The notes: generated from the sequence alone by a model not told the origin. Positions 1-43,384 are shown, counted from the first letter of the stretch. The stretch: DNA of 64,000 nucleotides from IMGVR_UViG_3300027782_000027:176760-240759; one strand, 5' to 3'. Numbers and translations are program-made.

Positions 1-2
1 GT

Positions 3-3000
3 AGTTCAGGGACTAGTGGAACATCTGGTTCAAGTGGTTCAAGTGGTTCTTCAGGGTCTAGTGGTAGTGTAGGAACAAGCGGAACTTCTGGTTCTTCAGG
101 AAGTAGTGGAAGTGCTGGGTCATCTGGTTCAAGTGGTTCGTCGGGTACATCAGGTGCTAATGGAAGCTCTGGTAGTTCAGGTTCAAGTGGTAGTTCAGGG
201 ACAAGTGGTTCGTCAGGTTCTAGCGGAAGTGCTGGAAGCTCAGGAAGTTCTGGTTCTGTTGGGACATCAGGTTCGTCAGGTACTTCAGGTTCAAGCGGTT
301 CTTCAGGTAGTAGTGGCTCAAGTGGTAGTTCAGGAAGTTCTGGTTCTGCGGGTACTTCAGGTTCAAGTGGAAGTGCTGGAACTAGTGGTTCATCTGGTAG
401 TTCAGGGTCTGCTGGTAGTTCAGGGTCAAGTGGAGTAACTGGTTCTTCAGGTACTAGCGGGTCTTCAGGAAGTTCTGGTAGTTCAGGTTCTAGTGGAAGT
501 GTTGGAACTAGCGGTTCATCAGGTACAAGTGGTTCATCCGGCTCAAGTGGAAGTTCTGGTTCATCAGGAAGTTCTGGTTCAACAGGTTCATCAGGAAGTT
601 CTGGTTCAACAGGTTCATCAGGAACAAGTGGTACGTCAGGTAGTAGCGGTTCTAGTGGTAGTACAGGGACTAGTGGTTCGTCAGGAAGTTCTGGCTCAGC
701 TGGTACAAGCGGAAGTTCAGGTTCTACAGGTAGTAGTGGGTCTAGCGGAAGTGCGGGTTCTTCAGGAAGTGTAGGGACTAGTGGAACATCTGGTTCTAGT
801 GGTAGTTCTGGTTCTAGTGGAAGTACGGGTAGTTCAGGTACTAGCGGTAGTAGTGGTTCATCAGGAAGTTCTGGTTCCACAGGTTCTTCGGGAAGTAGTG
901 GAACATCAGGTTCTGTAGGTTCATCAGGTACTAGTGGTTCTTCAGGTTCTAGTGGAAGTGCTGGAAGTTCAGGTTCAACTGGTACATCTGGTTCTTCAGG
1001 TTCAGTAGGAACAAGTGGAACTTCTGGTTCAAGTGGTAGTTCAGGTTCTTCAGGTTCAGTAGGAACAAGTGGAACTTCTGGTTCAAGTGGTAGTTCAGGT
1101 TCTTCTGGAACTAGTGGAAGTGTTGGTACAAGTGGTTCATCTGGAACATCAGGTTCTAGTGGTAGTTCAGGAAGTTCTGGTTCATCAGGAAGTTCGGGTT
1201 CCACAGGTTCTTCGGGAACATCAGGAAGTACTGGAAGTTCAGGGTCTAGTGGAAGTACTGGTAGTTCAGGGACTAGTGGTTCGTCAGGGTCTAGCGGAAG
1301 TTCAGGTACATCAGGTACTTCTGGTTCAAGTGGGTCTTCAGGTTCTAGTGGAAGTGTTGGAACATCAGGTACGAGCGGTTCGTCAGGTTCTAGTGGTAGC
1401 ACTGGAAGCTCAGGAAGTGCGGGTACATCAGGTAGTTCAGGTTCTGTAGGTACAAGTGGTAGTTCTGGAAGCTCAGGAAGTTCTGGTTCATCAGGTTCTG
1501 CGGGAAGTGCTGGTACATCAGGAACATCAGGTTCATCGGGAAGTAGTGGTAGTTCAGGGTCATCTGGTTCAGCAGGTACATCAGGTGCTAATGGAAGTTC
1601 TGGTACTTCAGGAACATCTGGTTCTTCAGGTTCAAGTGGAAGTAGTGGTTCATCAGGAAGTGTGGGTACATCTGGTTCATCTGGTACATCTGGTACATCA
1701 GGAACATCTGGTTCAAGTGGCTCAGCAGGTTCTAGCGGAAGTGCTGGAAGCTCAGGAAGTAGCGGTTCATCTGGTACATCAGGAGCTAATGGAAGTAGTG
1801 GAACATCTGGTTCTTCAGGTTCAAGTGGTAGTAGTGGTAGTTCAGGTTCAGCTGGTTCTTCTGGAACATCAGGTTCTAGCGGAAGCTCAGGAAGTACTGG
1901 TTCATCTGGTTCTTCTGGTACTTCAGGAAGTAGTGGAAGTTCTGGAACATCAGGTTCAAGCGGTTCATCAGGTAGTTCAGGAAGTGTTGGAACAAGTGGA
2001 AGTTCTGGAACTTCAGGTTCAAGTGGTTCGTCAGGTTCTAGTGGTAGTGCTGGAAGCTCTGGTACGTCAGGTACTAGTGGTTCATCAGGAACTTCAGGTT
2101 CAAGTGGTTCGTCAGGTTCTAGTGGTAGTACTGGAAGCTCAGGAAGTACTGGTACAAGTGGAAGTTCTGGTTCATCAGGTAGTTCAGGAAGTGTTGGTAC
2201 AAGTGGAAGTTCAGGTTCTGCCGGAACGTCTGGTTCATCAGGAAGTTCGGGTTCAAGCGGTAGTAGTGGAAGTTCAGGTTCTACTGGTTCAAGAGGAACA
2301 TCAGGAACATCAGGTAGTAGTGGTACAAGTGGAACATCAGGTACTTCTGGTTCATCAGGTTCTAGCGGAAGTGCTGGTTCATCAGGTACATCGGGAGCTA
2401 ACGGAAGTTCAGGTACAAGTGGTACTTCAGGAAGTAGTGGAAGTTCAGGGTCTAGCGGTAGTGCTGGAAGTTCAGGTTCTACTGGTACAAGTGGCTCTTC
2501 AGGAAGTTCTGGTACAAGTGGCTCTTCAGGAAGTTCTGGTTCATCGGGTAGTAGTGGAAGTGCGGGGTCATCTGGTTCATCAGGTACATCAGGTGCTAAT
2601 GGAAGTTATGGTACTTCAGGTACTAGTGGAAGTTCAGGGTCTAGCGGTAGTGCTGGAAGTTCTGGTTCTGTAGGTACAAGTGGCTCATCAGGTTCTAGCG
2701 GAAGCGCTGGAAGTTCAGGAAGTACTGGCTCAAGTGGTAGTTCTGGTTCGTCAGGAACAAGTGGTGCTAATGGTAGTTCAGGAACGTCTGGTTCAAGTGG
2801 CTCATCTGGTTCTTCAGGAAGTAGTGGTAGTTCTGGTTCTGTTGGAACATCAGGTTCTAGCGGTTCATCAGGAAGTTCTGGTTCTTCAGGAAGTACAGGT
2901 TCAAGTGGAACATCAGGTACTTCTGGTTCGTCAGGTTCTAGCGGTTCATCAGGAAGTAGTGGTAGTGCAGGTTCTTCAGGAACATCAGGGGCTAACGGTT

Positions 3001-6000
3001 CTTCAGGTACAAGTGGTTCGTCAGGTTCTAGCGGTAGTACTGGAAGCTCAGGAAGTAGTGGTACATCGGGTGCTAATGGAAGCAGCGGAACATCAGGAAG
3101 TTCAGGGTCTAGTGGTTCTTCAGGAACTGCTGGCTCAAGTGGATTATCAGGAAACGACTCTTCTAACTCAGGTAGATGGAGATATAATGGAACAGGTACT
3201 ACACCTGCAGCAACATTCTTTCAGACAGATAGTACAACAATATCTTCAATTACTAATGTCTATATAAACATTGATGATATAAATTCCACATCTTATGCTT
3301 CGTGGTTTTCTGGAATAGATACCATACAGGCTCTTGGTAATACTGTTTATTTACAAATCACACAAGTAGGTTCTAACAATATTATTGGTATATGGGATGT
3401 TGCAGGAATTACAGTAACCGGTAGTGTTTATAGATGGATATTCAAAGGTAATATTGTTGCAAATGGAACTTTATCCAGTACAGAATATACAATATCATGG
3501 GTATTTAATGGTCTTAATGGTTCATCTGGTACGAGCGGAAGTTCTGGAACATCAGGTTCAAGCGGAAGTTCGGGCAGTTCAGGTTCGTCAGGTAATACTG
3601 GAAGTTCAGGAACATCAGGTTCATCAGGAACTAGCGGTTCATCAGGTAGTGCTGGCTCAAGTGGAAGTTCAGGTAATACAGGTTCTTCGGGTACAAGTGG
3701 TAGTTCAGGGTCTTCAGGTAGTGTAGGTACATCTGGAACGAGTGGAACATCGGGTACTAGTGGAAGTTCAGGTTCATCAGGAAGTGCTGGTACGAGTGGA
3801 AGTTCAGGAACATCGGGTTCAAGTGGTAGTTCAGGTTCGTCAGGTAATACTGGAAGTTCAGGTTCTTCAGGAACATCAGGGTCCAGTGGTAGTTCAGGAA
3901 GTACAGGTTCTTCAGGTTCAAGTGGAACATCAGGAAGTTCAGGGTCTAGTGGTTCTTCAGGTTCTAGTGGTAGTGCTGGAAGTTCTGGTACATCAGGTGC
4001 TAATGGTAGTTCAGGAACATCTGGCTCAAGCGGTTCATCTGGCTCAAGTGGAAGTAGTGGTAGTTCTGGTTCAGTTGGAACATCAGGTTCTAGTGGAAGT
4101 AGTGGTAGTTCAGGGTCTTCAGGAAGTACTGGTTCAAGAGGAACAAGCGGTTCTTCAGGAACATCGGGAAGCTCAGGTTCAAGTGGTTCATCAGGTACTT
4201 CAGGTTCTAACGGAAGTTCAGGAACATCAGGAAGTGCTGGTTCAAGTGGTAGTTCAGGTTCATCAGGTTCAAGTGGAACATCAGGTTCTAATGGTAGCTC
4301 TGGTACATCAGGTAGTTCTGGTTCAAGTGGTAGTAGTGGTTCTAGCGGTAGTGCTGGTACTTCAGGTTCAGTAGGGACAAGTGGCTCTTCAGGAAGTGCG
4401 GGTAGTTCAGGGTCAAGTGGAAATACAGGCTCTTCGGGTACTAGCGGTTCATCAGGAACATCAGGTTCTTCTGGCTCAAGTGGCTCGTCAGGGTCTGGTG
4501 GAAGCTCAGGTACATCGGGTAGTAGTGGAACATCAGGGTCTTCAGGCTCAAGTGGAAGTTCAGGTAGTACAGGTTCATCGGGTTCATCTGGTATTACAGG
4601 TTCTTCAGGAACTAGTGGTAGTTCAGGTACATCAGGAAGTTCGGGTTCATCAGGTAGTAGTGGAAGCACTGGCTCAAGTGGTACTGGAGGTTCTTCAGGA
4701 ACATCAGGTTCTTCTGGTTCAAGTGGAAGCTCAGGTTCTTCGGGTAATAGCGGTTCATCGGGAACTTCTGGGTCAAGTGGAACATCAGGTTCTTCTGGCT
4801 CTTCAGGTAGTTCTGGGTCTAGCGGAAGTGCTGGCTCAAGTGGTAGTTCAGGTTCATCGGGTATTACTGGAAGTAGTGGAACAAGTGGTTCTTCTGGCTC
4901 AAGCGGAAGTTCAGGAACATCGGGTTCTTCGGGTACTTCAGGGTCAAGTGGTTCTTCAGGAAGTAGCGGAAGTTCGGGTAATACAGGTTCTTCTGGAACT
5001 AGCGGTTCATCAGGTAGTGCTGGTTCAAGCGGAAGTTCGGGTAATACAGGTTCTTCTGGAACTAGCGGTTCATCAGGTAGTGCTGGTTCAAGCGGAAGTT
5101 CGGGTAATACAGGTTCTTCGGGTACAAGTGGTAGTTCTGGAACATCGGGGTCAACAGGTTCTTCAGGAAGTTCTGGGATTACTGGTTCCTCAGGTACTTC
5201 TGGTTCAGGTTCTGCTGGTTCATCAGGTTCTAGCGGAAGTGGGTCATCAGGAACAAGTGGATTAGATGGTATAAGTGGAACATCTGGCTCAAGTGGTATT
5301 ACTGGTTCATCAGGTACTTCAGGTTCTGGCTCATCAGGAAGTTCAGGGTCTAGTGGAAGTACGGGTTCGTCAGGAACATCAGGTTCGTCAGGAACATCAG
5401 GAAGTTCAGGTTCTAGTGGTAGTTCTGGTTCAAGTGGGAGTACTGGTTCAAGAGGAACTTCTGGAAGTCAAGGTAACAAAGGAGGTCTTCAGTATATCTA
5501 TGGTAATGGAGCCGGTACAGCACCTTCTTCAGGTCAATTTAGTTATAATGGTGCAGGTTCTTCAGTTTATGATTTGAAATTTAATGTAACAACCGCGGAT
5601 TCTGCAAATATTAGTGATTATTTTTTCAATTTAGTTGGAAAAAGTGGGATTGTATATTTGATTTTCAATTTAAATGGTTCAAACAAAATTGATATTTATA
5701 GCTTTAATAACGTTTCGGTAAGTGGTAGTGATTATCTTTTTACAGGAGCTTTAGATACAAATGCTGGAGATACAACACTTACAACTAGTGATTTATGTGC
5801 AATTACCATAATTGTTAATGGAGCATCAGGTGCTAATGGTAGTTCAGGAACTTCAGGTTCAAGTGGTAGTAGTGGAAGTACTGGTTCAAGAGGAACATCG
5901 GGTTCTTCAGGTTCAAGCGGAAGTTCTGGTTCATCAGGGACTAGCGGTTCATCAGGAACTTCAGGTTCTAGTGGAAGTTCAGGTTCTAGTGGAAGTTCTG

Positions 6001-6326
6001 GTTCAAGTGGTTCTTCAGGAACTTCAGGTTCAAGTGGAAGTACAGGTTCAAGAGGAACATCTGGAAGCTCAGGAACTAGTGGTACTTCAGGTTCATCGGG
6101 TTCTTCGGGTACTTCAGGTTCAAATGGTTCATCTGGTACAAGTGGTAGTTCAGGTTCATCGGGTAGTTCAGGTTCATCAGGGACTAGCGGTTCATCAGGA
6201 AGTTCTGGAATTACTGGCTCTTCAGGAACATCAGGTTCAGGTTCATCAGGAACTAGTGGAGCTGCGGGCGGAACATTCACATTAGGAATTGTTTACACAA
6301 CCGCAAACAATTTTAACTTTATATAA
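3..6326 (+). CDS. Giant Gly-X-Y (X,Y mostly Ser/Thr) repeat fibre protein with two globular inserts; 5'-partial (>2100 aa)
   Basis: Frame 3 reads agt tca ggg act agt gga (SSGTSG) from base 3 and stays in the Gly-X-Y register through the track's GTG at 1662, which is an internal Val codon, to TAA at 6326. The true start lies upstream of the window. Confidence 0.9.
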   Translation, partial: SSGTSGTSGSSGSSGSSGSSGSVGTSGTSGSSGSSGSAGSSGSSGSSGTSGANGSSGSSGSSGSSGTSGSSGSSGSAGSSGSSGSVGTSGSSGTSGSSGSSGSSGSSGSSGSSGSAGTSGSSGSAGTSGSSGSSGSAGSSGSSGVTGSSGTSGSSGSSGSSGSSGSVGTSGSSGTSGSSGSSGSSGSSGSSGSTGSSGSSGSTGSSGTSGTSGSSGSSGSTGTSGSSGSSGSAGTSGSSGSTGSSGSSGSAGSSGSVGTSGTSGSSGSSGSSGSTGSSGTSGSSGSSGSSGSTGSSGSSGTSGSVGSSGTSGSSGSSGSAGSSGSTGTSGSSGSVGTSGTSGSSGSSGSSGSVGTSGTSGSSGSSGSSGTSGSVGTSGSSGTSGSSGSSGSSGSSGSSGSTGSSGTSGSTGSSGSSGSTGSSGTSGSSGSSGSSGTSGTSGSSGSSGSSGSVGTSGTSGSSGSSGSTGSSGSAGTSGSSGSVGTSGSSGSSGSSGSSGSAGSAGTSGTSGSSGSSGSSGSSGSAGTSGANGSSGTSGTSGSSGSSGSSGSSGSVGTSGSSGTSGTSGTSGSSGSAGSSGSAGSSGSSGSSGTSGANGSSGTSGSSGSSGSSGSSGSAGSSGTSGSSGSSGSTGSSGSSGTSGSSGSSGTSGSSGSSGSSGSVGTSGSSGTSGSSGSSGSSGSAGSSGTSGTSGSSGTSGSSGSSGSSGSTGSSGSTGTSGSSGSSGSSGSVGTSGSSGSAGTSGSSGSSGSSGSSGSSGSTGSRGTSGTSGSSGTSGTSGTSGSSGSSGSAGSSGTSGANGSSGTSGTSGSSGSSGSSGSAGSSGSTGTSGSSGSSGTSGSSGSSGSSGSSGSAGSSGSSGTSGANGSYGTSGTSGSSGSSGSAGSSGSVGTSGSSGSSGSAGSSGSTGSSGSSGSSGTSGANGSSGTSGSSGSSGSSGSSGSSGSVGTSGSSGSSGSSGSSGSTGSSGTSGTSGSSGSSGSSGSSGSAGSSGTSGANGSSGTSGSSGSSGSTGSSGSSGTSGANGSSGTSGSSGSSGSSGTAGSSGLSGNDSSNSGRWRYNGTGTTPAATFFQTDSTTISSITNVYINIDDINSTSYASWFSGIDTIQALGNTVYLQITQVGSNNIIGIWDVAGITVTGSVYRWIFKGNIVANGTLSSTEYTISWVFNGLNGSSGTSGSSGTSGSSGSSGSSGSSGNTGSSGTSGSSGTSGSSGSAGSSGSSGNTGSSGTSGSSGSSGSVGTSGTSGTSGTSGSSGSSGSAGTSGSSGTSGSSGSSGSSGNTGSSGSSGTSGSSGSSGSTGSSGSSGTSGSSGSSGSSGSSGSAGSSGTSGANGSSGTSGSSGSSGSSGSSGSSGSVGTSGSSGSSGSSGSSGSTGSRGTSGSSGTSGSSGSSGSSGTSGSNGSSGTSGSAGSSGSSGSSGSSGTSGSNGSSGTSGSSGSSGSSGSSGSAGTSGSVGTSGSSGSAGSSGSSGNTGSSGTSGSSGTSGSSGSSGSSGSGGSSGTSGSSGTSGSSGSSGSSGSTGSSGSSGITGSSGTSGSSGTSGSSGSSGSSGSTGSSGTGGSSGTSGSSGSSGSSGSSGNSGSSGTSGSSGTSGSSGSSGSSGSSGSAGSSGSSGSSGITGSSGTSGSSGSSGSSGTSGSSGTSGSSGSSGSSGSSGNTGSSGTSGSSGSAGSSGSSGNTGSSGTSGSSGSAGSSGSSGNTGSSGTSGSSGTSGSTGSSGSSGITGSSGTSGSGSAGSSGSSGSGSSGTSGLDGISGTSGSSGITGSSGTSGSGSSGSSGSSGSTGSSGTSGSSGTSGSSGSSGSSGSSGSTGSRGTSGSQGNKGGLQYIYGNGAGTAPSSGQFSYNGAGSSVYDLKFNVTTADSANISDYFFNLVGKSGIVYLIFNLNGSNKIDIYSFNNVSVSGSDYLFTGALDTNAGDTTLTTSDLCAITIIVNGASGANGSSGTSGSSGSSGSTGSRGTSGSSGSSGSSGSSGTSGSSGTSGSSGSSGSSGSSGSSGSSGTSGSSGSTGSRGTSGSSGTSGTSGSSGSSGTSGSNGSSGTSGSSGSSGSSGSSGTSGSSGSSGITGSSGTSGSGSSGTSGAAGGTFTLGIVYTTANNFNFI
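990..1097 (+). repeat. Exact 54-bp tandem duplication inside the Gly-Ser gene
   Basis: ggttcttcaggttcagtaggaacaagtggaacttctggttcaagtggtagttca at 990-1043 and 1044-1097. Confidence 0.85.
4965..5119 (+). repeat. Exact 63-bp tandem repeat (about 2.5 copies) inside the Gly-Ser gene
   Basis: agcggaagttcgggtaatacaggttcttctggaactagcggttcatcaggtagtgctggttca starts at 4965 and 5028, with a partial copy at 5091. Confidence 0.85.
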
Positions 6327-6334
6327 TATTTATA
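6327..6334 (+). promoter_or_regulatory. Putative phage late promoter TATTTATA
   Basis: Member of a motif recurring upstream of more than 10 genes. Confidence 0.55.
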
Positions 6335-6362
6335 ATAAACTAAATTAAACTAATATAATAAT

Positions 6363-6782
6363 ATGCCAGCGAATACAGCTCCAATCTTTACACTATTACC
6401 TGAGATTATGTGGGATAATACTATCACAACTGCTAATAATACTGGTGATTTAACTTCAGGTACAGTTTATCCTGTATTTACCGCAGGTACCAATGGTAGT
6501 TATGTGCAAAAAATAAGATTTAGACATACAGGTGCCAATTCGGCGGCAACTGTTGCTCGTGTTTGGATTAATAATGGTTCTGCGACTACTAGTGCAATTA
6601 ATAACACTTTATTTGATGAAATAACAATTGCTGCAAACGCCACATTTACAACGAATGCCGCCTCAACCAACTATGAATTACCACTTATGTTTGGTTTACC
6701 TCCTAATTATAGACTTTATGTAACAATCGGTGCGGCTGCTGCAGGTGGTATTGATGCAACGGTTATAGGAGGAGACTACTAA
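6363..6782 (+). CDS. Hypothetical tail-fibre-associated beta-rich virion protein
   Basis: 139-aa Thr/Ala/Asn-rich ORF directly after the fibre gene. Confidence 0.7.
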   Translation: MPANTAPIFTLLPEIMWDNTITTANNTGDLTSGTVYPVFTAGTNGSYVQKIRFRHTGANSAATVARVWINNGSATTSAINNTLFDEITIAANATFTTNAASTNYELPLMFGLPPNYRLYVTIGAAAAGGIDATVIGGDY

Positions 6783-6967: not shown

Positions 6968-6973
6968 AAAATT

Positions 6974-7870
6974 ATGATTGACTATTACAATTTAGCTGAC
7001 AATCAATATAAAAATCAAGTATATACCGGGTCTATAGGTACTAATACTACTTTCATGGTTTATTATTGGATTAAACCAAGAGGTGTTACTATGGTACATA
7101 TTACTGCTATTGGTGCTGGAGGTGGTGGAGGTGGTGGTAATTCTTCTGCGAGTACTGCGGCTTCAGGTGGTTCTGGTGGTGGTTCAGGAGCTATTACAAG
7201 ATTAACAATCCCCGCTATTTTTTTACCCGACCAACTTAGAATAATTGTTGCCGCTGGTGGTTCTGGAGGAACTACAGGTGGAGGTAATACTGCAGCTAAT
7301 ACTTTTGTTGAAGTTGCTAGAGGTTCTGCGGTTGCGGCTACCTATGTGTTACAAGCTAACGGTGGTGGTGGAGGTAACGTAGGTGCTGCGGGAGCAGCTT
7401 CTGCGGGTGGTGGAGCCGGAGCTATAGGTGTTCAAACTAATGCAGTATATCAGGCTTTAGGTACGTTTTCAGTTATTGCAGGTCAAGCGGGTGCTGCAGG
7501 TGCAAATGGTGCCGTAGGGGGTACAATAACAATTAACGGTAATGCTACAACAGTATCAGGAGGTGCCGCTGGAGGTGGGAAAAGTGCAGCTAATACCTCA
7601 TTTGGTGGTGGTAATATCAATCCTATTGGGCAAATACCTACAGGTAATGGAGGAAGCGCGGGTGGAACTAATAATGGTGATACAGGAACTTATACGTTTA
7701 ATGGATTTTATAGTGCAGGAGGTGCTGGTGGAGGTGCTTTTGCAACAGGTACTGCGGGCAGAGGAGGTGATGGTGGACCTGGCAGCGGTGGAGGTGGTGG
7801 TGGTTCAGGAGTAACTGGAGGTAATGGAGGTAATGGTGGACCCGGTATGGTAATAATAACATGTTGGTAA
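6974..7870 (+). CDS. Glycine-rich (polyglycine) adhesin-like protein, paralogue 1
   Basis: WIKPRGVTMVHITAIGAGGGGGGG ... GGNGGPGMVIITCW. Confidence 0.8.
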   Translation: MIDYYNLADNQYKNQVYTGSIGTNTTFMVYYWIKPRGVTMVHITAIGAGGGGGGGNSSASTAASGGSGGGSGAITRLTIPAIFLPDQLRIIVAAGGSGGTTGGGNTAANTFVEVARGSAVAATYVLQANGGGGGNVGAAGAASAGGGAGAIGVQTNAVYQALGTFSVIAGQAGAAGANGAVGGTITINGNATTVSGGAAGGGKSAANTSFGGGNINPIGQIPTGNGGSAGGTNNGDTGTYTFNGFYSAGGAGGGAFATGTAGRGGDGGPGSGGGGGGSGVTGGNGGNGGPGMVIITCW

Positions 7871-7882
7871 TAAGTATAAAAT

Positions 7883-8761
7883 ATGAGTTTTGTATATGAT
7901 TTAGCGGACACAAGTTATAAGACCGCAGTGTTTTATCAGTCAGGTAGTTGGATAAAACCACAAGGTATAACCATGATATCTATCACGGCTATTGGTGCTG
8001 GTGGTGGAGGTAGTGGAGGGGCTACTAATACATCTGCTAACGCAAGGTCAGGAGGTGGTGGAGGTGGTTCAGGTAGTATTACAAGATTGACTATTCCTGA
8101 AATGTTTATAACTGATTCATTAATTATAAATATTGGTACGGGTGGTAACGGAGGTGCTGCTGGTTTAGGAAATGGAGGTAGTGGAGGGTCAACAATTGTT
8201 GACATGCCTGTTCCGGGTAATGGTGACATATATACAAGAGTAATAGTTGCTACTGGAGGGTCAGGAGCAGTTGGTGCTACAGGAGGAGTGGCCGCAGGTG
8301 CAACTGACGTAGCCGCGGCATTATATTCGACATTAGGTATTTGGATGGCTATTGGAGGACAAGGAGGTGGTAACGGATTAACTGCCGCAGGTACTTCGGT
8401 AACATATGGAGCGACTATTGGACTACCAATTACCTCAGGTGCGGGAGGTGGTGGTATGGCCGCGGCAGGTACCACACCAACAAATGGTGGAGAAATTACA
8501 GGCGCAGGGTTTGTGTCTACAAACCCTGGTGGTATTTCAGGAGCTACAGGGAATAGAGGGGTTTATTCATTAACACCTTTTTATTCTACAGGAGGAAGTG
8601 GAGGTGGAGGTGGAGGGACAACTCCAGTTTCAGGTGGTGCAGGAGGTGATGGAAATATTGGATGTGGTGGTGGCGGTGGTGGAGGTGGTACTTCACCCAC
8701 AGGTGTTGGTGGCATTGGAGGAAAAGGTGGAGACGGTTTAGTAATAATACAATGTTGGTAA
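7883..8761 (+). CDS. Glycine-rich adhesin-like protein, paralogue 2
   Basis: WIKPQGITMISITAIGAGGGG ... GGKGGDGLVIIQCW. Confidence 0.8.
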   Translation: MSFVYDLADTSYKTAVFYQSGSWIKPQGITMISITAIGAGGGGSGGATNTSANARSGGGGGGSGSITRLTIPEMFITDSLIINIGTGGNGGAAGLGNGGSGGSTIVDMPVPGNGDIYTRVIVATGGSGAVGATGGVAAGATDVAAALYSTLGIWMAIGGQGGGNGLTAAGTSVTYGATIGLPITSGAGGGGMAAAGTTPTNGGEITGAGFVSTNPGGISGATGNRGVYSLTPFYSTGGSGGGGGGTTPVSGGAGGDGNIGCGGGGGGGGTSPTGVGGIGGKGGDGLVIIQCW

Positions 8762-8770
8762 TATAATAAT

Positions 8771-9649
8771 ATGGATTTTCAATATAATTTAACAAACAAC
8801 TCTCATAAGGTTTTCATTTACAACAGTGATGGTACTCACACATGTCAATTACCTAAAGGTGTGTCTATGGTATATGTTATTACAATAAGTGCTGGTGGAG
8901 GTGGTGGTGGAGGATTTACATCCGCCAGTGGAGCCGCTGGAGGAGGAGGTGGTGGAGGTACAGGAGCAGTCAACCGTATCATCATTCCAAAAATATTTTT
9001 GACAGATAGTTTAACAGTTGTAGTTGGTGCCGGAGGTGCCGGAGGTGCTGCAAATACTATTGGTTCTAACGGAGGGGCAACATCTGTAGGATTAAATGTG
9101 ACAACTGGTGGAGGTGCTCAATCATTTTTATTAAGTATTACTGCTGGTGGTGGAGGAGGAAACCCCGGAACTGTGGGGGCTGGTGGTACGGGAGGTGCTG
9201 CTGGAGCTACGTCATCGGTAAACAATATGGCTATGACAGCTTTAGGTGAGTTTGTATTAAGAGCTGGTATTGCGGGTGGTGATGGTAATGCGACTGGAGC
9301 TCCATTGGCTGGTATATACGGGTCAGGTATTGTTCCTTTATCCGCTGGTAGAGGTGGTGCGGGTCGTACAGCAGGTAACGTTCCAGCCGCTGGTGGTTCT
9401 ATTTCAGGTAGAGGATTTGTACAAGATGTTCCAGGAGGTACTTCAGGTGGTGGTACAGGTGTTGATGGTATGTTTATGCGGAAACCTTTTGTATCACTCG
9501 GTGGTACAGGTGGTGGTTCATCAACAGGTGTGGGTGGTAACGGTGGTAATGGAGGACCTGGTAGCGGTGGAGGCGGTGGTGGTGCTGGAACAACAGGAGG
9601 AACAGGAGGACGTGGTGGTAATGGCTTAGTAATTATAACTTGTTGGTAA
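8771..9649 (+). CDS. Glycine-rich adhesin-like protein, paralogue 3
   Basis: LPKGVSMVYVITISAGGGGGGG ... GGRGGNGLVIITCW. Confidence 0.8.
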   Translation: MDFQYNLTNNSHKVFIYNSDGTHTCQLPKGVSMVYVITISAGGGGGGGFTSASGAAGGGGGGGTGAVNRIIIPKIFLTDSLTVVVGAGGAGGAANTIGSNGGATSVGLNVTTGGGAQSFLLSITAGGGGGNPGTVGAGGTGGAAGATSSVNNMAMTALGEFVLRAGIAGGDGNATGAPLAGIYGSGIVPLSAGRGGAGRTAGNVPAAGGSISGRGFVQDVPGGTSGGGTGVDGMFMRKPFVSLGGTGGGSSTGVGGNGGNGGPGSGGGGGGAGTTGGTGGRGGNGLVIITCW

Positions 9650-9658
9650 TTATATAAT

Positions 9659-9925: not shown

Positions 9926-9965
9926 TATATTTCATTTTTAATATTCATAAAAATAAATTTCTTGT

Positions 9966-9977: not shown

Positions 9978-12062
9978 ATGGCACTTGGATTTCAAAATTG
10001 TTGTGATGTAGAAGATTATTTTTATGTAACTGGTATACCTGGTTCGGTTTCTGAATTTGAAATATATTATATTCAAACTGTTGAAGGTGAAAAACTATGT
10101 GGTACATATGTTGAATTACCTACATTAGATTATCAACCAATTACCTATGATTTAATAGGTATGACAGCACAGACAAGTTGTACAAATTGTATTTTATTAA
10201 ATCCTTGTCCAACAGGAATTACTATAGATTTCGGAACTCAAAGTACTGGAATTTTCACACCTGTTAATGAGTGTAATGTTAAAACTATCTTTCCTTTTGA
10301 TGTTGAATGTAGAACTGTGGTACCTGTAATTGGTGAAGGTAACGTAAACGGTTCGGTAAGTTTATTTGTTACAGGTGGTACTCCACCTTATAATTTTTAT
10401 AGTGCGGGAACACAAACTCAAATAGGTGTGGGTATTTTACCGACTAATAATGAGTATTTGTTATATGAAAATGTCCCGGCAGGTGATTACTCAATTTTAG
10501 TTCATGACTTTTGGGGAGATAATGTTCAGGTTGTTACTTGTAATATACCTCTTGTTCCTGACCCGTTATATGTTGAATGTCAACCTAACTCACCTGAGTT
10601 TGGTTTACCATCAAGTGGTTCTTTAGATTTGTTAATAACAGGAGGGACTGAACCATATTCGATTTATTTGAGTGGTAATCCTGTTAGTTTACCTATATTT
10701 AATCTAACGGCAGGAACATATACATTAGTTATTGAGGATAATGGTGTTGAAGATTATTTTCAAACTGAAACAATTACTTGTACTTTATTAAATCCTGAGG
10801 ATTTAGTTTATCCTGATAAGTTATGTATGAACTTCCAATACTGTGGGGTTAACTTCTATTTAGATTTTGTAAGTGCGTCAACACTTAATTCAAGACCTGT
10901 ATATAACTTATCGACACCAAGTGAAATAAGTGTTACAGGAATGACAATATATTATGATGAATATTGGTTAAGTTCAATTGAAACTCATAACTCTCCATTA
11001 CCTATCCCAACAGATTGTGAACAATCAAATGTGGTATCGTTTAAAATTGGAAATACATTTTCAGACCAACCTAATGGTTCTAACTGGATTGGTGGTGGTA
11101 CATTTGCAAATACTAATCCAATAGTTGTTACTTCAGGACAATGTTCGCAGATAACACCAACAGTTATTACTAATGCTCAAGGAGGGTGTGGTTTAACAGA
11201 TAATATTGGTAGTGTTATATTATTACCAAATCCATCGTCAGGTCAACCATATACATATTATGTTGATGGTATTGAGTATAACACTCCTGTAGTTAGTAAT
11301 TTAGGTAATGGTGGACATACTGCTCAAGTCTTAGATGTTAACGGTAATTTGAGTAATGTTGTATCATTTACAATTAATAATTCTCCGTTATCACAAACCT
11401 ATTGGGATTATTGCTCATATGTAAATACATTTACAAATACAATAAATGGAGGGATAAAAAAGGATAATTTTAAAGCGAGATTTCTAAATACAACCTCAAA
11501 TTGTTCAATTAAAGCTAAACTAAGAATTATTTATGAATATGCGGAATGGTCGCCCAATAATGAAAATACAACTCAAAATATCAGTCCATATACAGGTACA
11601 CAATTACTTGTATATCTAAATAATGTTGTACAACAAACAGCAACTTTTCAGTTAATAAGTTCACAAAATACTACTTTTATAATTCCAAGTTGTTCACCTA
11701 CAAATACGTTTCAACCGTTTACAAAAACTGTTCAGGTATACGAAACTACAAATTTTGTAAATTTTATAACATTAAATTCACTTGTTGAGGTGAAAGGTGT
11801 TGGATTTGCTTGGGTTTGGAATACTACAACACCTCTTCTTGATTACCCACAATGCTTCCCCGCAGTGTCAGGAACCTCAACCGTGCAAATTTTTAATGCT
11901 ACACTATCGTTTCCCCCAAATTGTCAGTGTATTTTACCGCCACAAGATGTAACAATTGGTGTTTCGCAAATTAATGTGAATCGAAGAAATACAACGTTAG
12001 TTGGTAATGTTATATTAAATACACCGGCAAATATACCAGCAAATATGAATTGTACAGTATAA
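9978..12062 (+). CDS. Cys-rich structural/adhesin protein with SprB-like repeats
   Basis: GSVSLFVTGGTPPYNFY...VPAGDYSILVHD and GSLDLLITGGTEPYSIY...LTAGTYTLVIED repeats. Confidence 0.65.
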   Translation: MALGFQNCCDVEDYFYVTGIPGSVSEFEIYYIQTVEGEKLCGTYVELPTLDYQPITYDLIGMTAQTSCTNCILLNPCPTGITIDFGTQSTGIFTPVNECNVKTIFPFDVECRTVVPVIGEGNVNGSVSLFVTGGTPPYNFYSAGTQTQIGVGILPTNNEYLLYENVPAGDYSILVHDFWGDNVQVVTCNIPLVPDPLYVECQPNSPEFGLPSSGSLDLLITGGTEPYSIYLSGNPVSLPIFNLTAGTYTLVIEDNGVEDYFQTETITCTLLNPEDLVYPDKLCMNFQYCGVNFYLDFVSASTLNSRPVYNLSTPSEISVTGMTIYYDEYWLSSIETHNSPLPIPTDCEQSNVVSFKIGNTFSDQPNGSNWIGGGTFANTNPIVVTSGQCSQITPTVITNAQGGCGLTDNIGSVILLPNPSSGQPYTYYVDGIEYNTPVVSNLGNGGHTAQVLDVNGNLSNVVSFTINNSPLSQTYWDYCSYVNTFTNTINGGIKKDNFKARFLNTTSNCSIKAKLRIIYEYAEWSPNNENTTQNISPYTGTQLLVYLNNVVQQTATFQLISSQNTTFIIPSCSPTNTFQPFTKTVQVYETTNFVNFITLNSLVEVKGVGFAWVWNTTTPLLDYPQCFPAVSGTSTVQIFNATLSFPPNCQCILPPQDVTIGVSQINVNRRNTTLVGNVILNTPANIPANMNCTV

Positions 12063-34549: not shown

Positions 34550-37150
34550 ATGAAAAAAATATTGTTCATTGTACCCCACCTATCAACTGGGGGATTACCG
34601 CAAGTTACGACAAACAAAATCCAACTTCTTAAGGATGACTACATTATTAAGTGTGTGGAGTACGGATGTTATTCATGGGATTTTGTTGTTCAGAAGAACC
34701 GAATTAAGAATTTAATCGGTGAGGAGAATCTTATTACATTATGGGATGACAAGAATGTTTTGATTAATCTTATTGATGAATTCCAACCTGATATTATATC
34801 TATGGAGGAATTCCCTGAGTTTTTTATGGGACATGAAATTACAAGACAGATTTATAGAAAAAATCGTCTGTACAAGATATTTGAAACAACACATGATTCA
34901 AGTTTCAAACCAACATCTAAAATTTGGTTCCCTGATAAGTTTATTTTTGTTAGTGTGTTTAATGCTATTCAGTATTCTATGTTTGATATTCCTTACGAGG
35001 TGATTGAGTACCCCATTGAAAATAGAGAGAAGAGAAAGGAATTGTTCCAAGATAAACTTGGGTTAGATAAGGGATGGAAACATGTTGTTAATGTTGGATT
35101 GTTTACTGAAAGGAAAAACCAAAAGTATATTTTTGAAATTGCTCGTAAGTTAGAAAATAGTAAAATTAAGTTTCATTTTATTGGTAATCAGGCGGATAAC
35201 TTTAAGAGTTACTGGGAACCATTGATGAAAAACAAACCTGAGAACTGTATTGTTTGGGGTGAAAAAGATAATGTAAATGAATTTTTGGAAGCGTCTGATT
35301 TATTCATGTTCCCATCAAAAGGTGATAGAAATAATAAGGAGTTAAACCCGATTGCTATTAAGGAAGCCATTGAATATGGTATTCCGATGATGATGTATAA
35401 TCTTGATGTGTATTGTGGGAAATATGATAAACTACCTCAGGTTAAATTTTTGAATGGGGATATTGATAATGATGTGAATAATATGATGGATATTTTAAAT
35501 ATAGGTGGGGTTGATTCTCTGTTTAATTTTGGTTTTAATGGGGAAACTAATCAGATTACCATAAATTATAATGGTAATGAAAAGTTGAACTTTAATATTA
35601 GTATTAGGGATATGACATCAAAGGCTCCAATGTATTGGTTTAATTTACCTTTGGAGTATCCAATATTTTATTGGACAATACCCATTCCAATTCATATTAA
35701 GAAATTCAAAGACAACCCTAATTTCAGAGGGTTTTTGGTTGAGTTTTATGATGTGGAAACAAACGAATTAGTTTTTGGACAGGAGTTGATTGTTAATAGT
35801 AATTTTTACCCGAGAATTCCTGAATTTAAATTTAAACCTTTGGACTGTAACTATATTAATTACTACGAGTTCTTTGTTGATAGATGTTTTGACGATTTGA
35901 GATTAGAAAATCTTGACACTGTAATTGACATCGGTGCTAATGTCGGATTGTTTGCTAAGTATATGTATTCTGTAAATGCTAAGAAGGTTATTTTAGTTGA
36001 GGCAAATCCATACCTAAGAGAGAGTATTGAATACCATTTAGATAATGATTTGGAAACATCAACTATCTATATGAACCCAGTCTATAAAGAACATACCAAA
36101 ATTGACTTTAGATTTTCAAAAGAAAATTCAACAATTGGTTCAAATGTTTTTGACGGTAATGTTGGTGAATACGGTCAACTTAATAATTTAATCAGTTGTG
36201 ATACAATTACTATTGATGACATTTATAAGGATAATAACTACGGTAGAATATCATTATTTAAATGTGATATTGAAGGTGGTGAGTATCCTATTTTTGAATC
36301 AATTACTGATGAACAGATTGGACTGGTTGATAGGTTCATGGTTGAGTTCCATGAAAACACCAACGGACAAATTAATATTATACTTGAAAAACTTGAAAAG
36401 AATAATTTTGAGTATGACATTATTGTTTATGAGATGGGTAAAAAAATTAGAGCGGATAGAAATGCTAAACATGGTGTAATTTTTGCCAAACCTAAGAATG
36501 TTAAATTAAGGAAACCTGGTACTTTATCATCATCAGTTTATGATGTTACAAAAAGTTTTGAAGAACGATTAGCGGAATATACTGGAGCACCTTACGCAGT
36601 TACAATAGATAATCAAAGTAACGCTTTATTCTTATCGTTGTATTACGAGAAAATAACTGGTAAAACAATTAAAATACCAAGTAGAACATATCCATCAGTT
36701 CCTTGTGAAATTATACATGCTGGTGGTAAGGTTGAATTTGAAGATGTTTATGGGTCAACATTAAAAGGACCTTATCAGTTATCACCGACAAATGTGTGGG
36801 ATTCAGCCTTAAGATTTACTACCGACATGTATATACCAGGAACACATATGTGTCTATCATTTACAGGTCCATACAAACACCTAAAACTTGGTAAGGGTGG
36901 TGCAATCTTAACTGACGACTTTGAAGCTTATAAGTGGTTTAAGAGAGCTAGATATTCAGGTAGAAATGAAGTTTCGTATCATGATGATAATTTTGATATG
37001 TTAGGATGGAATTTTTATATGATGCCTGAAATTGCGTCAAGAGGATTGTTACTTATGAACCAATTTTATAATATGGACGGGACACCTAAACATAATGAGG
37101 ATTTGGAATTACCATACCCTGACTTATCAAAATTTGATGTTTATAAATGA
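34550..37150 (+). CDS. Fusion: GT4 glycosyltransferase + FkbM methyltransferase + DegT/DnrJ-like PLP aminotransferase
   Basis: HLSTGGLP, RKNQ, ELNPIAIKEA; VIDIGANVG, KCDIEGGE; FEERLAEYTG, WDSA, SFTGPYKHL..GKGGAI. Confidence 0.85.
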   Translation: MKKILFIVPHLSTGGLPQVTTNKIQLLKDDYIIKCVEYGCYSWDFVVQKNRIKNLIGEENLITLWDDKNVLINLIDEFQPDIISMEEFPEFFMGHEITRQIYRKNRLYKIFETTHDSSFKPTSKIWFPDKFIFVSVFNAIQYSMFDIPYEVIEYPIENREKRKELFQDKLGLDKGWKHVVNVGLFTERKNQKYIFEIARKLENSKIKFHFIGNQADNFKSYWEPLMKNKPENCIVWGEKDNVNEFLEASDLFMFPSKGDRNNKELNPIAIKEAIEYGIPMMMYNLDVYCGKYDKLPQVKFLNGDIDNDVNNMMDILNIGGVDSLFNFGFNGETNQITINYNGNEKLNFNISIRDMTSKAPMYWFNLPLEYPIFYWTIPIPIHIKKFKDNPNFRGFLVEFYDVETNELVFGQELIVNSNFYPRIPEFKFKPLDCNYINYYEFFVDRCFDDLRLENLDTVIDIGANVGLFAKYMYSVNAKKVILVEANPYLRESIEYHLDNDLETSTIYMNPVYKEHTKIDFRFSKENSTIGSNVFDGNVGEYGQLNNLISCDTITIDDIYKDNNYGRISLFKCDIEGGEYPIFESITDEQIGLVDRFMVEFHENTNGQINIILEKLEKNNFEYDIIVYEMGKKIRADRNAKHGVIFAKPKNVKLRKPGTLSSSVYDVTKSFEERLAEYTGAPYAVTIDNQSNALFLSLYYEKITGKTIKIPSRTYPSVPCEIIHAGGKVEFEDVYGSTLKGPYQLSPTNVWDSALRFTTDMYIPGTHMCLSFTGPYKHLKLGKGGAILTDDFEAYKWFKRARYSGRNEVSYHDDNFDMLGWNFYMMPEIASRGLLLMNQFYNMDGTPKHNEDLELPYPDLSKFDVYK

Positions 37151-37770
37151 TAGTTGGATTCAATGAATATAAACACAAGTATCAATTTAATGTTACAGGT
37201 GTAATTCATGTTGGGGCTCATGTTGGTCAAGAATATAATCAATATATTGAAACATTTGGTTTAATCTCTACATATTGGTTTGAACCAATACCACATGTTT
37301 ATAAAGAACTATCAAAAAATTTAGATGGGAAACCTAACACATTTTATTATAATGTTGCGATAGGTGAAAAAATTGGTATACATAAAATGTATCTTGATGA
37401 TGGTAACGGACAACAAAGTTCATCGTTATTAAAACCAAAAGAACATCAAAATTTTTATCCCCATATCAAATTTAGTGAAGAAAACACTATTAATATTACC
37501 TTGAATACATTAGATTTTTATGGTATAGATAGTTGTAATGTTTTAGTTTTAGATACTCAGGGGTATGAGTTAAATGCTCTTAAGGGTTCAATTAATACCT
37601 TAAAGAATATTGATTATATATTCACAGAATTTAATGTTATTGAAATGTATGATGGTTGTCCATCAATTGAACAACTTGATGAGTTTTTACAACCTTTTGG
37701 TTTTTACAGACAAGAAACATGGAATGTTGATGGAGTATGGGGTGATGCATTTTACTTAAAAAAAATATGA
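37147..37770 (+). CDS. FkbM-family methyltransferase
   Basis: IHVGAHVGQE, FEP, LDTQGYELNALKG. Confidence 0.85.
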   Translation: MIVGFNEYKHKYQFNVTGVIHVGAHVGQEYNQYIETFGLISTYWFEPIPHVYKELSKNLDGKPNTFYYNVAIGEKIGIHKMYLDDGNGQQSSSLLKPKEHQNFYPHIKFSEENTINITLNTLDFYGIDSCNVLVLDTQGYELNALKGSINTLKNIDYIFTEFNVIEMYDGCPSIEQLDEFLQPFGFYRQETWNVDGVWGDAFYLKKI

Positions 37771-41423: not shown

Positions 41424-41424
41424 T

Positions 41425-42144: not shown

Positions 42145-42145
42145 T

Positions 42146-43383: not shown

Positions 43384-43384
43384 T

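What the first reader, a model, noticed from the sequence alone, without database searches (positions are those of the whole stretch)
3..6326. Proline-free collagen-register fibre of about 600 Gly-Ser/Thr triplets
Seen: more than 2100 aa open from the window edge. Gly occurs at every third residue for roughly 1850 aa, X/Y are almost only Ser/Thr (occasional A, V, N, R, I), and the repeat has no Pro. Established: collagen-like phage and bacterial fibres usually rely on Pro and charged residues, whereas Gly-X-X repeats can also form polyproline-II bundles, as in springtail antifreeze protein. Inference: as a triple helix (about 0.29 nm per residue) this would be a filament of about 0.5 micrometre, offering more than 1000 hydroxyls as glycosylation or ice/water-binding sites.
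Basis: partly seen in the sequence, partly recalled or inferred. Interest (0 to 1): 0.65.

Follow-up and report, generated by a model that had tools for sequence, protein, structure and literature searches.

The report
Giant proline-free collagen-like phage fibre
An uncultured jumbo bacteriophage encodes a 4,766-residue fibre protein made almost entirely of Gly-Ser/Thr-Ser triplets, without proline or charge; as a collagen-type triple helix it would be over a micrometre long, and sugar-adding enzymes encoded beside it may be what stabilises it.

Summary
The window is the last 64 kb of a 240.8-kb IMG/VR phage record. The ORF continues 8 kb upstream and is 14,301 nt, 4,766 aa and 391 kDa. It has 1,431 Gly-X-Y triplets, one run of 1,168 without a slip, no Pro, 11 charged residues and 2,631 Ser/Thr in the repeats. 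Two other metagenome assemblies carry the same ORF with 1 and 3 mismatches and no indel. Synonymous codons are scrambled (all 101-mers unique), so it is not an assembly artefact.

The gene lies in the baseplate/fibre module of a T4-like myophage, probably of Bacteroidota. Its N-terminal 207 aa are shared with a neighbouring 329-aa protein. Each collagen run ends in a globular domain or a conserved short tail. One knob folds confidently and recurs in many viral collagen proteins.

A GT60-type polypeptide GlcNAc-transferase homologue and two further glycosyltransferase-like genes lie just upstream, and a ten-gene glycan island lies 28 kb downstream.

Best reading: a trimeric, O-glycosylated collagen-like virion fibre of variable length. 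Triple helix, glycosylation and virion location are inferred. Pro-free Ser/Thr collagen runs are common in uncultured phages, so this is an extreme variant of a known kind.

The parts
3..3158 (+). Last 350 triplets of collagen-like run 1. The run begins upstream of the window at residue 208 (G000:C1 169406) and has 1,168 uninterrupted Gly-X-Y triplets. The gene starts at G000:C1 168785 with a 207-aa N-terminal anchor domain.
   Evidence: Searches give the sequence and triplet counts. Pfam PF01391 is over its cut-off along the whole run. The N-terminal domain is 42% identical (E 3e-47) to the N-terminus of the neighbouring 329-aa ORF.
3159..3509 (+). Knob 1: a 117-aa globular insert (residues 3712-3828) at the C-terminal end of run 1.
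   Evidence: It has no Pfam or PDB sequence match. AlphaFold2 gives a beta-sandwich with one helix, at pLDDT 85-97. It is conserved in 17 IMG/VR loci, always between Gly-X-Y runs. The fold recurs in many viral 'Collagen triple helix repeat' proteins.
3510..5489 (+). Collagen-like run 2: 216 triplets in blocks of 189, 10 and 17, separated by one-residue G-S-G register slips.
5490..5819 (+). Knob 2: a 110-aa globular insert (residues 4489-4598), weakly homologous to knob 1.
   Evidence: It is 27% identical to knob 1, E 3e-4. It is conserved in the 2,435-aa relatives.
5820..6242 (+). Collagen-like run 3: 47 triplets.
6243..6326 (+). C-terminal 27-aa tail with a hydrophobic, strand-like end, plus the stop codon. 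It is a candidate trimerisation nucleus or docking peptide.
   Evidence: Its last 16 residues are conserved, with one substitution, in the 2,435-aa relatives. The proposed function is inferred.
6363..6782 (+). A 139-aa ORF immediately downstream of the fibre gene. It co-occurs with the fibre's C-terminal tail.
   Evidence: It is 89% identical in the L014-type relatives, which share the tail. It is absent from the L019-type relatives, which have a different C-terminal domain.
6974..9649 (+). Three tandem glycine-rich paralogues (298, 292 and 292 aa; about 30% Gly). They are candidate tip adhesins or assembly factors.
   Evidence: Pfam PF21722 Gly_rich_2 matches at E 5.7e-10, and weak PHROG matches are 'tail fiber assembly' and 'minor tail'. 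They are only 56-72% identical in relatives whose flanking genes are 89-99% identical.
9978..12062 (+). A 694-aa protein with a sub-threshold SprB-repeat match: a further adhesin-like gene of the fibre module.
   Evidence: 24.2 bits, under the 28-bit cut-off. The upstream 720-aa ORF has SprB repeats over the cut-off.
34550..45517 (+). A glycan-synthesis island of ten back-to-back ORFs. It holds GT1, GT2 and GT4/GT9 domains, FkbM and other methyltransferases, a DegT aminotransferase and a PglD-like acetyltransferase. It is a possible source of sugars for the fibre, but no link was shown.

Best explanation
The gene encodes a virion fibre of a T4-like jumbo myophage. The N-terminal 207-aa domain anchors it to the particle, probably at the baseplate or tail; a shorter neighbouring fibre protein uses the same anchor. 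Three chains then wind into a collagen-type triple helix along 1,431 Gly-Ser/Thr-Ser triplets, giving a thin flexible filament of up to about 1.2 micrometres. Each helical run is nucleated and kept in register by the globular knob, or the short C-terminal tail, at its C-terminal end. The repeat lacks the two known stabilisers, imino acids and Lys-Glu/Asp salt bridges. Stability would therefore come from dense O-glycosylation of its roughly 2,600 Ser/Thr hydroxyls per chain. The likely enzymes are the GT60-type polypeptide GlcNAc-transferase homologue and the other glycosyltransferases encoded beside it. The filament would widen the capture radius for scarce host cells and present the distal knob, the tail and the downstream Gly-rich proteins to the cell surface. 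Its length changes quickly between strains. Shown here: the sequence, its reproducibility, the gene context, the domain layout, the knob fold and the GT linkage. Inferred: trimer, triple helix, glycosylation, virion location and function.
For: Constraint on the repeat:
- There are 1,168 consecutive triplets without one Gly replacement or register slip.
- Over the same stretch, codons are scrambled: Gly is GGT 668, GGA 391, GGG 67, GGC 46, and Ser uses six codons. No exact repeat exceeds 92 nt. This points to purifying selection on Gly at every third residue, not recent slippage.
- The X and Y positions are not equivalent. Thr is 368 at X against 85 at Y, Val 6 against 84, Ala 8 against 40. GSV is followed by GTS in 83 of 84 cases.

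Family matches:
- Pfam Collagen and PHROG tail-fibre families match.

Gene context:
- Tail sheath and gp6-like baseplate wedge genes lie upstream.
- Lectin-like and SprB-repeat neighbours surround the gene.
- The N-terminal domain is shared with the adjacent 329-aa ORF.

Domain layout:
- The knob is a confident beta-sandwich that recurs in many viral collagen proteins.
- In locus L056 a homologous knob is flanked by ordinary Pro- and charge-bearing collagen sequence.
- In every family member, each Gly-X-Y run is followed by a globular domain or the conserved tail. This fits the C-to-N zipper folding of collagens (PMC11923368).

Reproducibility:
- The 4,766-aa form occurs in 3 assemblies.
- The 2,435/2,429-aa form occurs in 4, and the 1,998-aa form in 4.

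Glycosylation machinery:
- A PF11397 gene (232.7 bits) lies 5.4 kb upstream, with an HtrL_YibB gene and a weak GT2 match beside it.
- The PF11397 family is rare: 4 of 50,697 GenBank phage records and 0 of 14 control genomes.
- Even so, it lies within 3-10 kb of Ser/Thr collagen genes or their anchor domain in divergent relatives L042, L045, L077 and L134, at 44-71% identity.
- GT60 enzymes start mucin-type O-glycosylation of Ser/Thr-rich domains (PMC8724618).
- Glycosylated Thr can replace hydroxyproline as a triple-helix stabiliser (PMC11923368, citing Mann 1996 and the galactosylated Gly-Pro-Thr peptide).
Against: - The repeats hold 0 Pro, 11 charged residues in 4,293 and no KGE or KGD. Both documented stabilising codes are therefore absent.
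- Gly-Ser-rich sequences are the usual flexible linkers. The flanks of the knob profile matched such linkers in PDB fusion constructs.
- From my own knowledge: the known glycosyl-Thr stabilisation concerns the Y position, whereas Thr here sits mainly at X and Ser fills Y.
- There is no expression, virion proteomics, glycan or imaging evidence.
- Read-level checks could not be run.
- The glycosyltransferases could instead act on phage DNA or host surface glycans.
- The attachment site (baseplate, neck or head) is not determined.
- The N-terminal domain model was poor.
Confidence: 0.55

Rival explanations
1. The protein is a mucin-like tether. It is a virion appendage, but the repeat is an extended and largely disordered or single-chain polyproline-II brush, stiffened only by dense O-glycans. 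It would resemble mucins or bacterial serine-rich repeat glycoproteins, and would not be a triple helix.
For: The composition (58% Ser+Thr, 31% Gly, no Pro, almost no charge) matches flexible Gly-Ser linkers and mucin-type acceptor domains. A GT60-type enzyme is encoded nearby (PMC8724618). Repeat length varies twofold between 98%-identical relatives, as in mucin tandem repeats.
Against: A brush has no need for Gly at exactly every third residue. Yet 1,168 triplets keep the register through heavy synonymous divergence, and X and Y differ strongly. The homologous knob sits in ordinary collagen sequence in L056. Every run has a C-terminal globular domain.
Confidence: 0.25
2. The repeat forms a polyproline-II / polyglycine-II bundle. 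The chain folds back on itself into stacked antiparallel PPII helices, as in springtail antifreeze protein or the gp38 adhesin of T-even phages. This would give a compact or ribbon-like hydroxyl-rich body, possibly ice- or water-binding.
For: The sequence has Gly-X-X periodicity with small residues. Gly-rich proteins are encoded just downstream.
Against: From my own knowledge: such bundles use short PPII segments of about 8-12 residues joined by turns, and need Gly at the inward-facing positions, usually two of every three. Here Gly is one in three. No periodic break or turn signal appears (autocorrelations at most 0.10 in size for Val, Ala and Y-position Thr at lags of 1-24 triplets, at most 0.16 for X-position Thr). 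One run has 1,168 triplets without interruption. No evidence bears on ice binding.
Confidence: 0.03
3. The ORF is an artefact: a mis-assembled low-complexity repeat, or an open frame that is not translated.
For: Short-read metagenome assemblies often break in repeats. Many related contigs end inside the repeat. Other frames and the opposite strand also carry ORFs of up to 467 aa.
Against: Three assemblies agree over 14,301 nt with at most 3 mismatches and no indel, and 3 of the 4 differences are synonymous. All 101-mers are unique. Codon usage follows the rest of the genome. The frame joins four conserved non-repeat domains. Only this frame is open throughout.
Confidence: 0.02
4. The molecule is as in the best explanation, but it is mounted elsewhere on the particle: as a neck whisker or head fibre rather than a baseplate or tail fibre.
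For: From my own knowledge: in T4 the whisker gene (fibritin) also follows the baseplate and short-fibre genes, and it carries a small C-terminal trimerisation unit. The anchor domain has no recognisable homologue.
Against: The neighbours on both sides are baseplate-type or adhesin-like genes. PHROG matches of the repeat are mostly tail-fibre families, but these reflect the repeat itself.
Confidence: 0.15

Closest known systems
Phage collagen-like tail-fibre proteins (Pfam PF01391; 'Bacteriophage collagen', Smith et al. 1998; for example P-SSM2 orf028 of T4-like cyanophages, PMC1079782)
   Same: Both have Gly-X-Y runs inside fibre genes of tailed phages, interrupted by globular domains. [quoted passage not shown] The knob fold found here also occurs in Synechococcus phage collagen proteins.
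   Different: This protein has no Pro, 92% Ser/Thr at X/Y, 1,431 triplets and a single uninterrupted run of 1,168. For comparison, about 330 triplets make a human fibrillar collagen chain (PMC11923368).
Bacterial and viral collagen-like proteins stabilised by Lys-Glu/Asp salt bridges (Scl2, EPclA; folding code of PMC11923368)
   Same: Both show the collagen register, interruptions, and C-terminal nucleation domains followed by zipper-like folding.
   Different: KGD is about 13% of viral collagen triplets in that survey. Here there are zero KGE or KGD, and 11 charged residues in 4,293.
Glycosylated-threonine collagens: Riftia cuticle collagen, Bacillus anthracis BclA (GPT repeats), galactosylated (Gly-Pro-Thr)10
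   Same: In both, hydroxy-amino acids stand in for hydroxyproline and sugars are the proposed stabiliser. Glycosyltransferase genes are at hand.
   Different: Those cases keep Pro at X and Thr at Y (my own knowledge). Here X is Ser/Thr and Y is mostly Ser. Glycosylation here is not shown.
Mucin-type domains and their GT60 polypeptide alpha-GlcNAc-transferases (Dictyostelium, Trypanosoma cruzi; PMC8724618), and bacterial serine-rich repeat glycoproteins
   Same: Both pair a very long Ser/Thr-rich repeat with a dedicated polypeptide glycosyltransferase homologue (PF11397, 232.7 bits).
   Different: Mucins have no strict Gly periodicity and no trimerising knobs. The enzyme's substrate here is unknown.
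T4 fibritin with its C-terminal foldon
   Same: Both are long trimeric phage fibres with an N-terminal anchor and a very small C-terminal unit that could nucleate trimer folding.
   Different: Fibritin is a coiled coil of 486 aa (my own knowledge). There is no sequence similarity, and the tail's role here is only inferred.
Springtail antifreeze protein and the gp38 polyglycine-II sandwich
   Same: Both have Gly-rich tripeptide periodicity and PPII-type backbone geometry.
   Different: See the membership test: the Gly fraction and the absence of turn periodicity do not fit.

Membership tests
Collagen-like proteins (triple-helix repeat, PF01391) | Uninterrupted Gly-X-Y repeats (6 or more triplets) that score over the Pfam gathering threshold | tested here: met
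   There are 1,431 triplets, with a longest run of 1,168. PF01391 scores 154 bits on 300 aa, and about 100 matches over the cut-off lie along the gene.
Collagen-like proteins (triple-helix repeat, PF01391) | Sequence-encoded stabilisers: Pro/Hyp at X/Y, or Lys-Gly-Glu/Asp salt-bridge triplets | tested here: not met
   The repeats hold 0 Pro, 0 KGE/KGD and 11 charged residues in 4,293.
Collagen-like proteins (triple-helix repeat, PF01391) | Alternative stabiliser: glycosylated Thr/Ser | not testable with these tools
   Only the means are shown: PF11397, HtrL_YibB and GT2-like genes upstream, and a glycan island in the window.
Collagen-like proteins (triple-helix repeat, PF01391) | Homotrimeric triple-helical conformation | not testable with these tools
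   This needs CD, melting curves, protease resistance or a solved structure.
Collagen-like proteins (triple-helix repeat, PF01391) | A non-collagenous trimerisation or nucleation domain next to each helical run | tested here: inconclusive
   Every run is followed by a knob, a C-terminal domain or the conserved tail. Knob 1 folds confidently. Trimerisation itself was not shown.
Phage tail fibres | The gene lies in the tail or baseplate morphogenesis module | tested here: met
   Tail sheath and gp6-like wedge genes lie upstream. Adhesin-like neighbours are present. Synteny is conserved in relatives.
Phage tail fibres | A conserved N-terminal anchor with variable distal parts | tested here: met
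   The N-terminus is 42-100% identical across 28 loci and in a paralogue. Repeat length, knobs and C-termini differ between them.
Phage tail fibres | Presence in the virion and receptor binding | not testable with these tools
   No isolate exists. The GenBank phage collection has no match for the anchor, the knob or the Gly-rich proteins.
Polyproline-II / polyglycine-II bundle proteins (springtail AFP, gp38) | Short PPII segments joined by regular turns, with Gly at most inward-facing positions | tested here: not met
   Gly is exactly one in three. There is no periodic signal at lags of 1-24 triplets, and one run has 1,168 triplets unbroken.
Mucin-like / serine-rich repeat glycoproteins | A Ser/Thr-rich repeat with a dedicated polypeptide glycosyltransferase | tested here: inconclusive
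   The composition fits and a PF11397 homologue is linked to the gene. The transferase's substrate is unknown, and the strict Gly register is not a mucin feature.

The most novel reading that the evidence does not exclude
The repeat may be a third kind of collagen. It would be a triple helix with neither imino acids nor salt bridges, held together only by O-linked sugars (or hydroxyl-water networks) on Ser/Thr installed by phage-encoded cytoplasmic glycosyltransferases. It would form the longest known virion appendage, about 1.2 micrometres. Its length would be tuned strain by strain as a 'fishing line' for scarce freshwater hosts.
Probability: 0.25. Interest if true: 0.8.

Novelty: new variant of a known kind. 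Interest (0 to 1): 0.6.

Why it matters
Collagen stability is currently explained by imino acids, salt bridges and, in a few animals and spores, glycosylated threonine. A natural 3,504-residue uninterrupted Gly-X-Y run with no Pro and almost no charge tests those rules directly. The strict register is conserved through scrambled codons.

If it folds, it defines a minimal, hydroxyl-only or glycan-dependent triple helix. The enzymes that would make it sit beside the gene. That would be useful for recombinant, hydroxylase-free collagen materials.

For phage biology, a micrometre-scale appendage whose length differs twofold between near-identical strains would be a new, evolvable adsorption trait. 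Such Pro-free Ser/Thr collagen runs are common in uncultured phages: 64 of 79 sampled loci have under 1% Pro. Yet none has been characterised.

Tried and rejected
- Trimer prediction of knob 1 with ten flanking triplets on each side (3 copies, own alignment) returned 'no answer'. It is not used as evidence either way.
- AlphaFold2 of the N-terminal anchor gave mean pLDDT 43 and was unusable.
- The ESM Atlas feature search of the anchor gave only scores below 0.9. These are leads only: Mtd_N and 'upper tail fiber' (one search was a size slip).
- PDB sequence searches found nothing for the Gly-rich paralogue or the anchor, and only collagen or linker matches for the knob's flanks.
- Foldseek against the PDB gave no match at E <= 0.001 for the knob; the best was an adenovirus fibre head at E 0.011. 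VIA-align gave at best Z 6.5, to a phage tail chain, which is within the range of common arrangements.
- The word-based protein search with the repeat (residues 208-1200) returned only 5 proteins of 2,850-4,543 aa. The two I inspected have short, ordinary collagen segments; three were not inspected because my script failed.
- tblastn of the repeat against GenBank phages is blanked by the complexity filter.
- The XacN1 homologue of the GT sits in a glyco-cluster beside a 3,313-aa baseplate-adjacent protein. That protein has no Gly-X-Y run.
- Higher-order periodicity was tested and not found.
- HSP70, a marker reported in some 'moraphages' (PMC12619734), is absent from this record. Membership of that lineage stays open.

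Full report
**1. Observation**

Window 3-6326 (+) is one open frame of 2,107 aa ending in a stop. It holds 613 Gly-X-Y triplets. The commonest are GSS 345, GTS 142, GSA 32, GST 28 and GSV 18. Only two prolines occur, and both are outside the repeat.

The register is broken by two globular inserts of 117 and 110 aa and a few one-residue G-S-G slips. The ORF is also cut by the window edge.

**2. The whole gene**

The window is the last 64 kb of a 240,759-bp IMG/VR virus record, linear, with a CheckV completeness estimate of 82%. In that record the frame opens at an ATG 7,975 nt upstream of window base 1, and the gene runs 14,301 nt.

| Property | Value |
|---|---|
| Length | 4,766 aa |
| Mass | 391 kDa |
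| Share of the record | 5.9% |
| Total triplets | 1,431 |
| Pro in the repeats (4,293 residues) | 0 |
| KGE/KGD in the repeats | 0 |
| Charged residues in the repeats | 11 |
| Ser+Thr in the repeats | 2,631 |

Layout along the protein:

| Residues | Element |
|---|---|
| 1-207 | N-terminal globular domain |
| 208-3711 | Run 1: 1,168 triplets without a single interruption |
| 3712-3828 | Knob 1 |
| 3829-4488 | Run 2: 216 triplets with three slips |
| 4489-4598 | Knob 2 |
| 4599-4739 | Run 3: 47 triplets |
| 4740-4766 | 27-aa tail |

At 0.286 nm per residue, the repeats would span about 1.23 micrometres as a triple helix, and run 1 alone about 1.0 micrometre.

**3. Real or artefact**

- The DNA is not a simple tandem repeat. 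Ser uses six codons and Gly four. The longest exact repeat is 92 nt and every 101-mer in the gene is unique. Tandem Repeats Finder sees only weak local arrays with 62-87% matches.
- Codon preferences follow the rest of the genome.
- Two other IMG/VR contigs from different metagenome assemblies carry an ORF of exactly the same length. They differ at 3 and 1 positions, with no indels, and three of the four differences are synonymous.
- Shorter forms are equally reproducible. The 2,435/2,429-aa form is in four contigs and the 1,998-aa form in four.

**4. Evidence for constraint**

Over 1,168 triplets the third position of the Gly codons is highly varied, while the first two positions never change and no one- or two-codon indel has survived.

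X and Y are not equivalent:

| Residue | At X | At Y |
|---|---|---|
| Thr | 368 | 85 |
| Val | 6 | 84 |
| Ala | 8 | 40 |

GSV is followed by GTS in 83 of 84 cases, giving a Y-Gly-X pair Val-Gly-Thr. That is the same geometric slot that salt-bridge triplets occupy in other collagens (PMC11923368).

No higher-order period exists. Autocorrelations are at most 0.10 in size for Val, Ala and Y-position Thr at lags of 1-24 triplets, and at most 0.16 for X-position Thr.

Between relatives whose N-terminal domain is 98% identical, the repeat aligns at only about 75% nucleotide identity with many gaps. The repeat therefore turns over fast while the register is kept.

**5. Context**

The record is a T4-like jumbo myophage.

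- Upstream on the same strand are a 1,071-aa tail sheath and a gp6-like baseplate wedge protein.
- Then come several large unassigned ORFs, a 720-aa protein with SprB repeats, a ConA/laminin-G-like 'virion structural' protein and the fibre gene.
- The fibre's first 207 residues are 42% identical (E 3e-47) to the N-terminus of a 329-aa ORF four genes further up. This is the pattern of a shared anchor used by alternative fibres.
- Downstream are a conserved 139-aa ORF, three Gly-rich paralogues (PF21722), a 694-aa ORF with a sub-threshold SprB-repeat match, and a 733-aa ORF.
- Only 4% of ORFs have a Shine-Dalgarno-like motif. Anchor homologues turn up on short contigs binned into Bacteroidetes and Flavobacterium MAGs, but also into others. 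With the SprB repeats, this points weakly to a Bacteroidota host.

**6. Family**

The anchor occurs in 28 IMG/VR loci at 47-100% identity. Complete or near-complete orthologues have 1,290, 1,998, 2,435, more than 3,337 and 4,766 aa. They have different numbers and kinds of knobs and different C-termini.

Knob 1 occurs in 17 loci, always embedded in Gly-X-Y runs. In the most distant one (L056) the flanks are ordinary collagen sequence with Pro and charged residues. This ties the Ser/Thr runs to the collagen context.

AlphaFold2 gives knob 1 a confident beta-sandwich, pLDDT 85-97. It has no clear PDB counterpart. It does match dozens of predicted viral proteins named 'Collagen triple helix repeat', from uncultured Caudovirales, Synechococcus phages and giant viruses.

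In every member, each run is followed on its C-terminal side by a globular domain. After the last run comes a conserved short hydrophobic tail or a 152-aa domain. This suits C-to-N zipper folding from a trimerising nucleus.

The 139-aa ORF and the Gly-rich trio accompany the short tail and are missing where the 152-aa domain replaces it. That suggests they work together at the distal end.

One relative has a second gene next door. A roughly 1,000-aa globular part is followed by the same Ser/Thr run.

**7. Glycosylation**

- A gene 5.4 kb upstream matches PF11397 at 232.7 bits, and a PHROG glycosyltransferase at E 1.9e-168.
- To my knowledge this Pfam family corresponds to CAZy GT60. Its characterised members put GlcNAc on hydroxyproline of Skp1 or on Ser/Thr of mucin-type domains (PMC8724618).
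- The family is rare. It is found in 4 of 50,697 GenBank phage records and in none of 14 control genomes.
- Despite that, it sits within 3-10 kb of Ser/Thr collagen genes or their anchor in divergent relatives at 44-71% identity.
- Beside it are a weak GT2 match and an HtrL_YibB protein with a weak second GT-like part.
- The window also holds a ten-gene glycan island at 34550-45517. It has GT1, GT2 and GT4/GT9 domains, methyltransferases, a DegT aminotransferase and a PglD-like acetyltransferase.
- None of this shows that the fibre is the substrate. DNA or host glycans are alternatives.

**8. How unusual**

Collagen-like phage fibres are long known (PMC1079782 and its reference to Smith et al. 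1998). Prokaryotic collagen-like chains of up to 2,000 triplets with many interruptions are on record (PMC11923368).

Of the 79 loci kept, 64 have under 1% Pro at X/Y, with Ser+Thr at 60-88% and runs of up to 594 triplets within the short stretches fetched. The proline-free Ser/Thr type is therefore common among uncultured phages.

This gene is its extreme, with 92% Ser/Thr at X/Y and an uninterrupted run of 1,168 triplets. I found no experimental study of this type in the searches made.

A paper on freshwater Bacteroidota jumbo 'moraphages' with several core glycosyltransferases does not mention collagen.

**9. Verdict**

The most likely reading is a trimeric, probably O-glycosylated, collagen-like virion fibre of strain-variable length, anchored in the tail region (confidence 0.55).

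| Rival reading | Confidence |
|---|---|
| The same appendage as a non-helical glycosylated tether | 0.25 |
| Same molecule, mounted at the neck or head | 0.15 |
| PPII bundle or antifreeze-like body | 0.03 |
| Artefact | 0.02 |

The open question is whether a chain with neither imino acids nor charge pairs forms a triple helix, and whether sugars make it do so. Simple recombinant experiments can settle it.

Noticed in passing
window 34550-45517 (+): This is a ten-gene glycan-synthesis island. It holds an 866-aa fusion of GT1, FkbM methyltransferase and DegT aminotransferase; a second FkbM methyltransferase; a PglD-like hexapeptide acetyltransferase; a 577-aa GT2; two further methyltransferase-like ORFs; and a 710-aa GT1/GT4 plus GT9 protein.
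   Followed up: partly
window 6974-9649 (+): Three tandem paralogues of about 292 aa have about 30% Gly (PF21722 Gly_rich_2) and a conserved hydrophobic C-terminus ending in Cys-Trp. They diverge much faster than their neighbours (56-72% against 89-99% identity in relatives). A BFVD protein named 'Glycine-rich domain-containing protein' also carries the knob fold.
   Followed up: partly
window 7936-8475 (-) and 2-1402 (-): Long antisense ORFs, Pro-rich opposite the Gly-rich genes, are mirror images of the biased coding strand. They are most likely not genes.
   Followed up: no
window 1-10000 against the rest: GC is 0.42-0.48 over the fibre and Gly-rich genes, against about 0.30 elsewhere. GC skew is strongly positive. 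The Gly (GGN) and Ser (AGY/TCN) codon load explains this, not foreign origin.
   Followed up: yes
whole record G000:C1: Only 9 of 229 ORFs (4%) have a Shine-Dalgarno-like motif, and the upstream regions are A/T-rich. With the SprB repeats and the MAG bin labels (Bacteroidetes, Flavobacterium, but also Thiobacillus and an archaeon), this hints at a Bacteroidota host.
   Followed up: partly
G000:C1 167547-168755 (just upstream of the window's gene): A 402-aa ORF with no family match lies immediately upstream of the fibre gene in nearly all relatives (34-95% identity), even where the glycosyltransferase genes are absent. It is a candidate adaptor or assembly partner.
   Followed up: no
L019:16148-20617 (+): In a 93%-anchor relative, the next gene (over 1,490 aa, running off the locus) joins a roughly 1,000-aa globular N-terminal part to the same Gly-Ser/Thr-Ser run. 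The repeat is therefore a movable spacer module.
   Followed up: no
L065/L066 (Xanthomonas phage XacN1, AP018399.1 203370-223508): The closest cultured-phage homologue of the PF11397 gene (47% identity) sits in a cluster with a carbamoyl transferase and a GT9 gene. The cluster lies next to a baseplate wedge gene and a 3,313-aa hypothetical protein that has no collagen register.
   Followed up: partly
window 14338-14940 (+) and 21668-24049 (+): A RuvC-like Holliday junction resolvase and an SbcC-like nuclease subunit lie here. The structural module ends near window 14.3 kb and a DNA-metabolism block follows.
   Followed up: no
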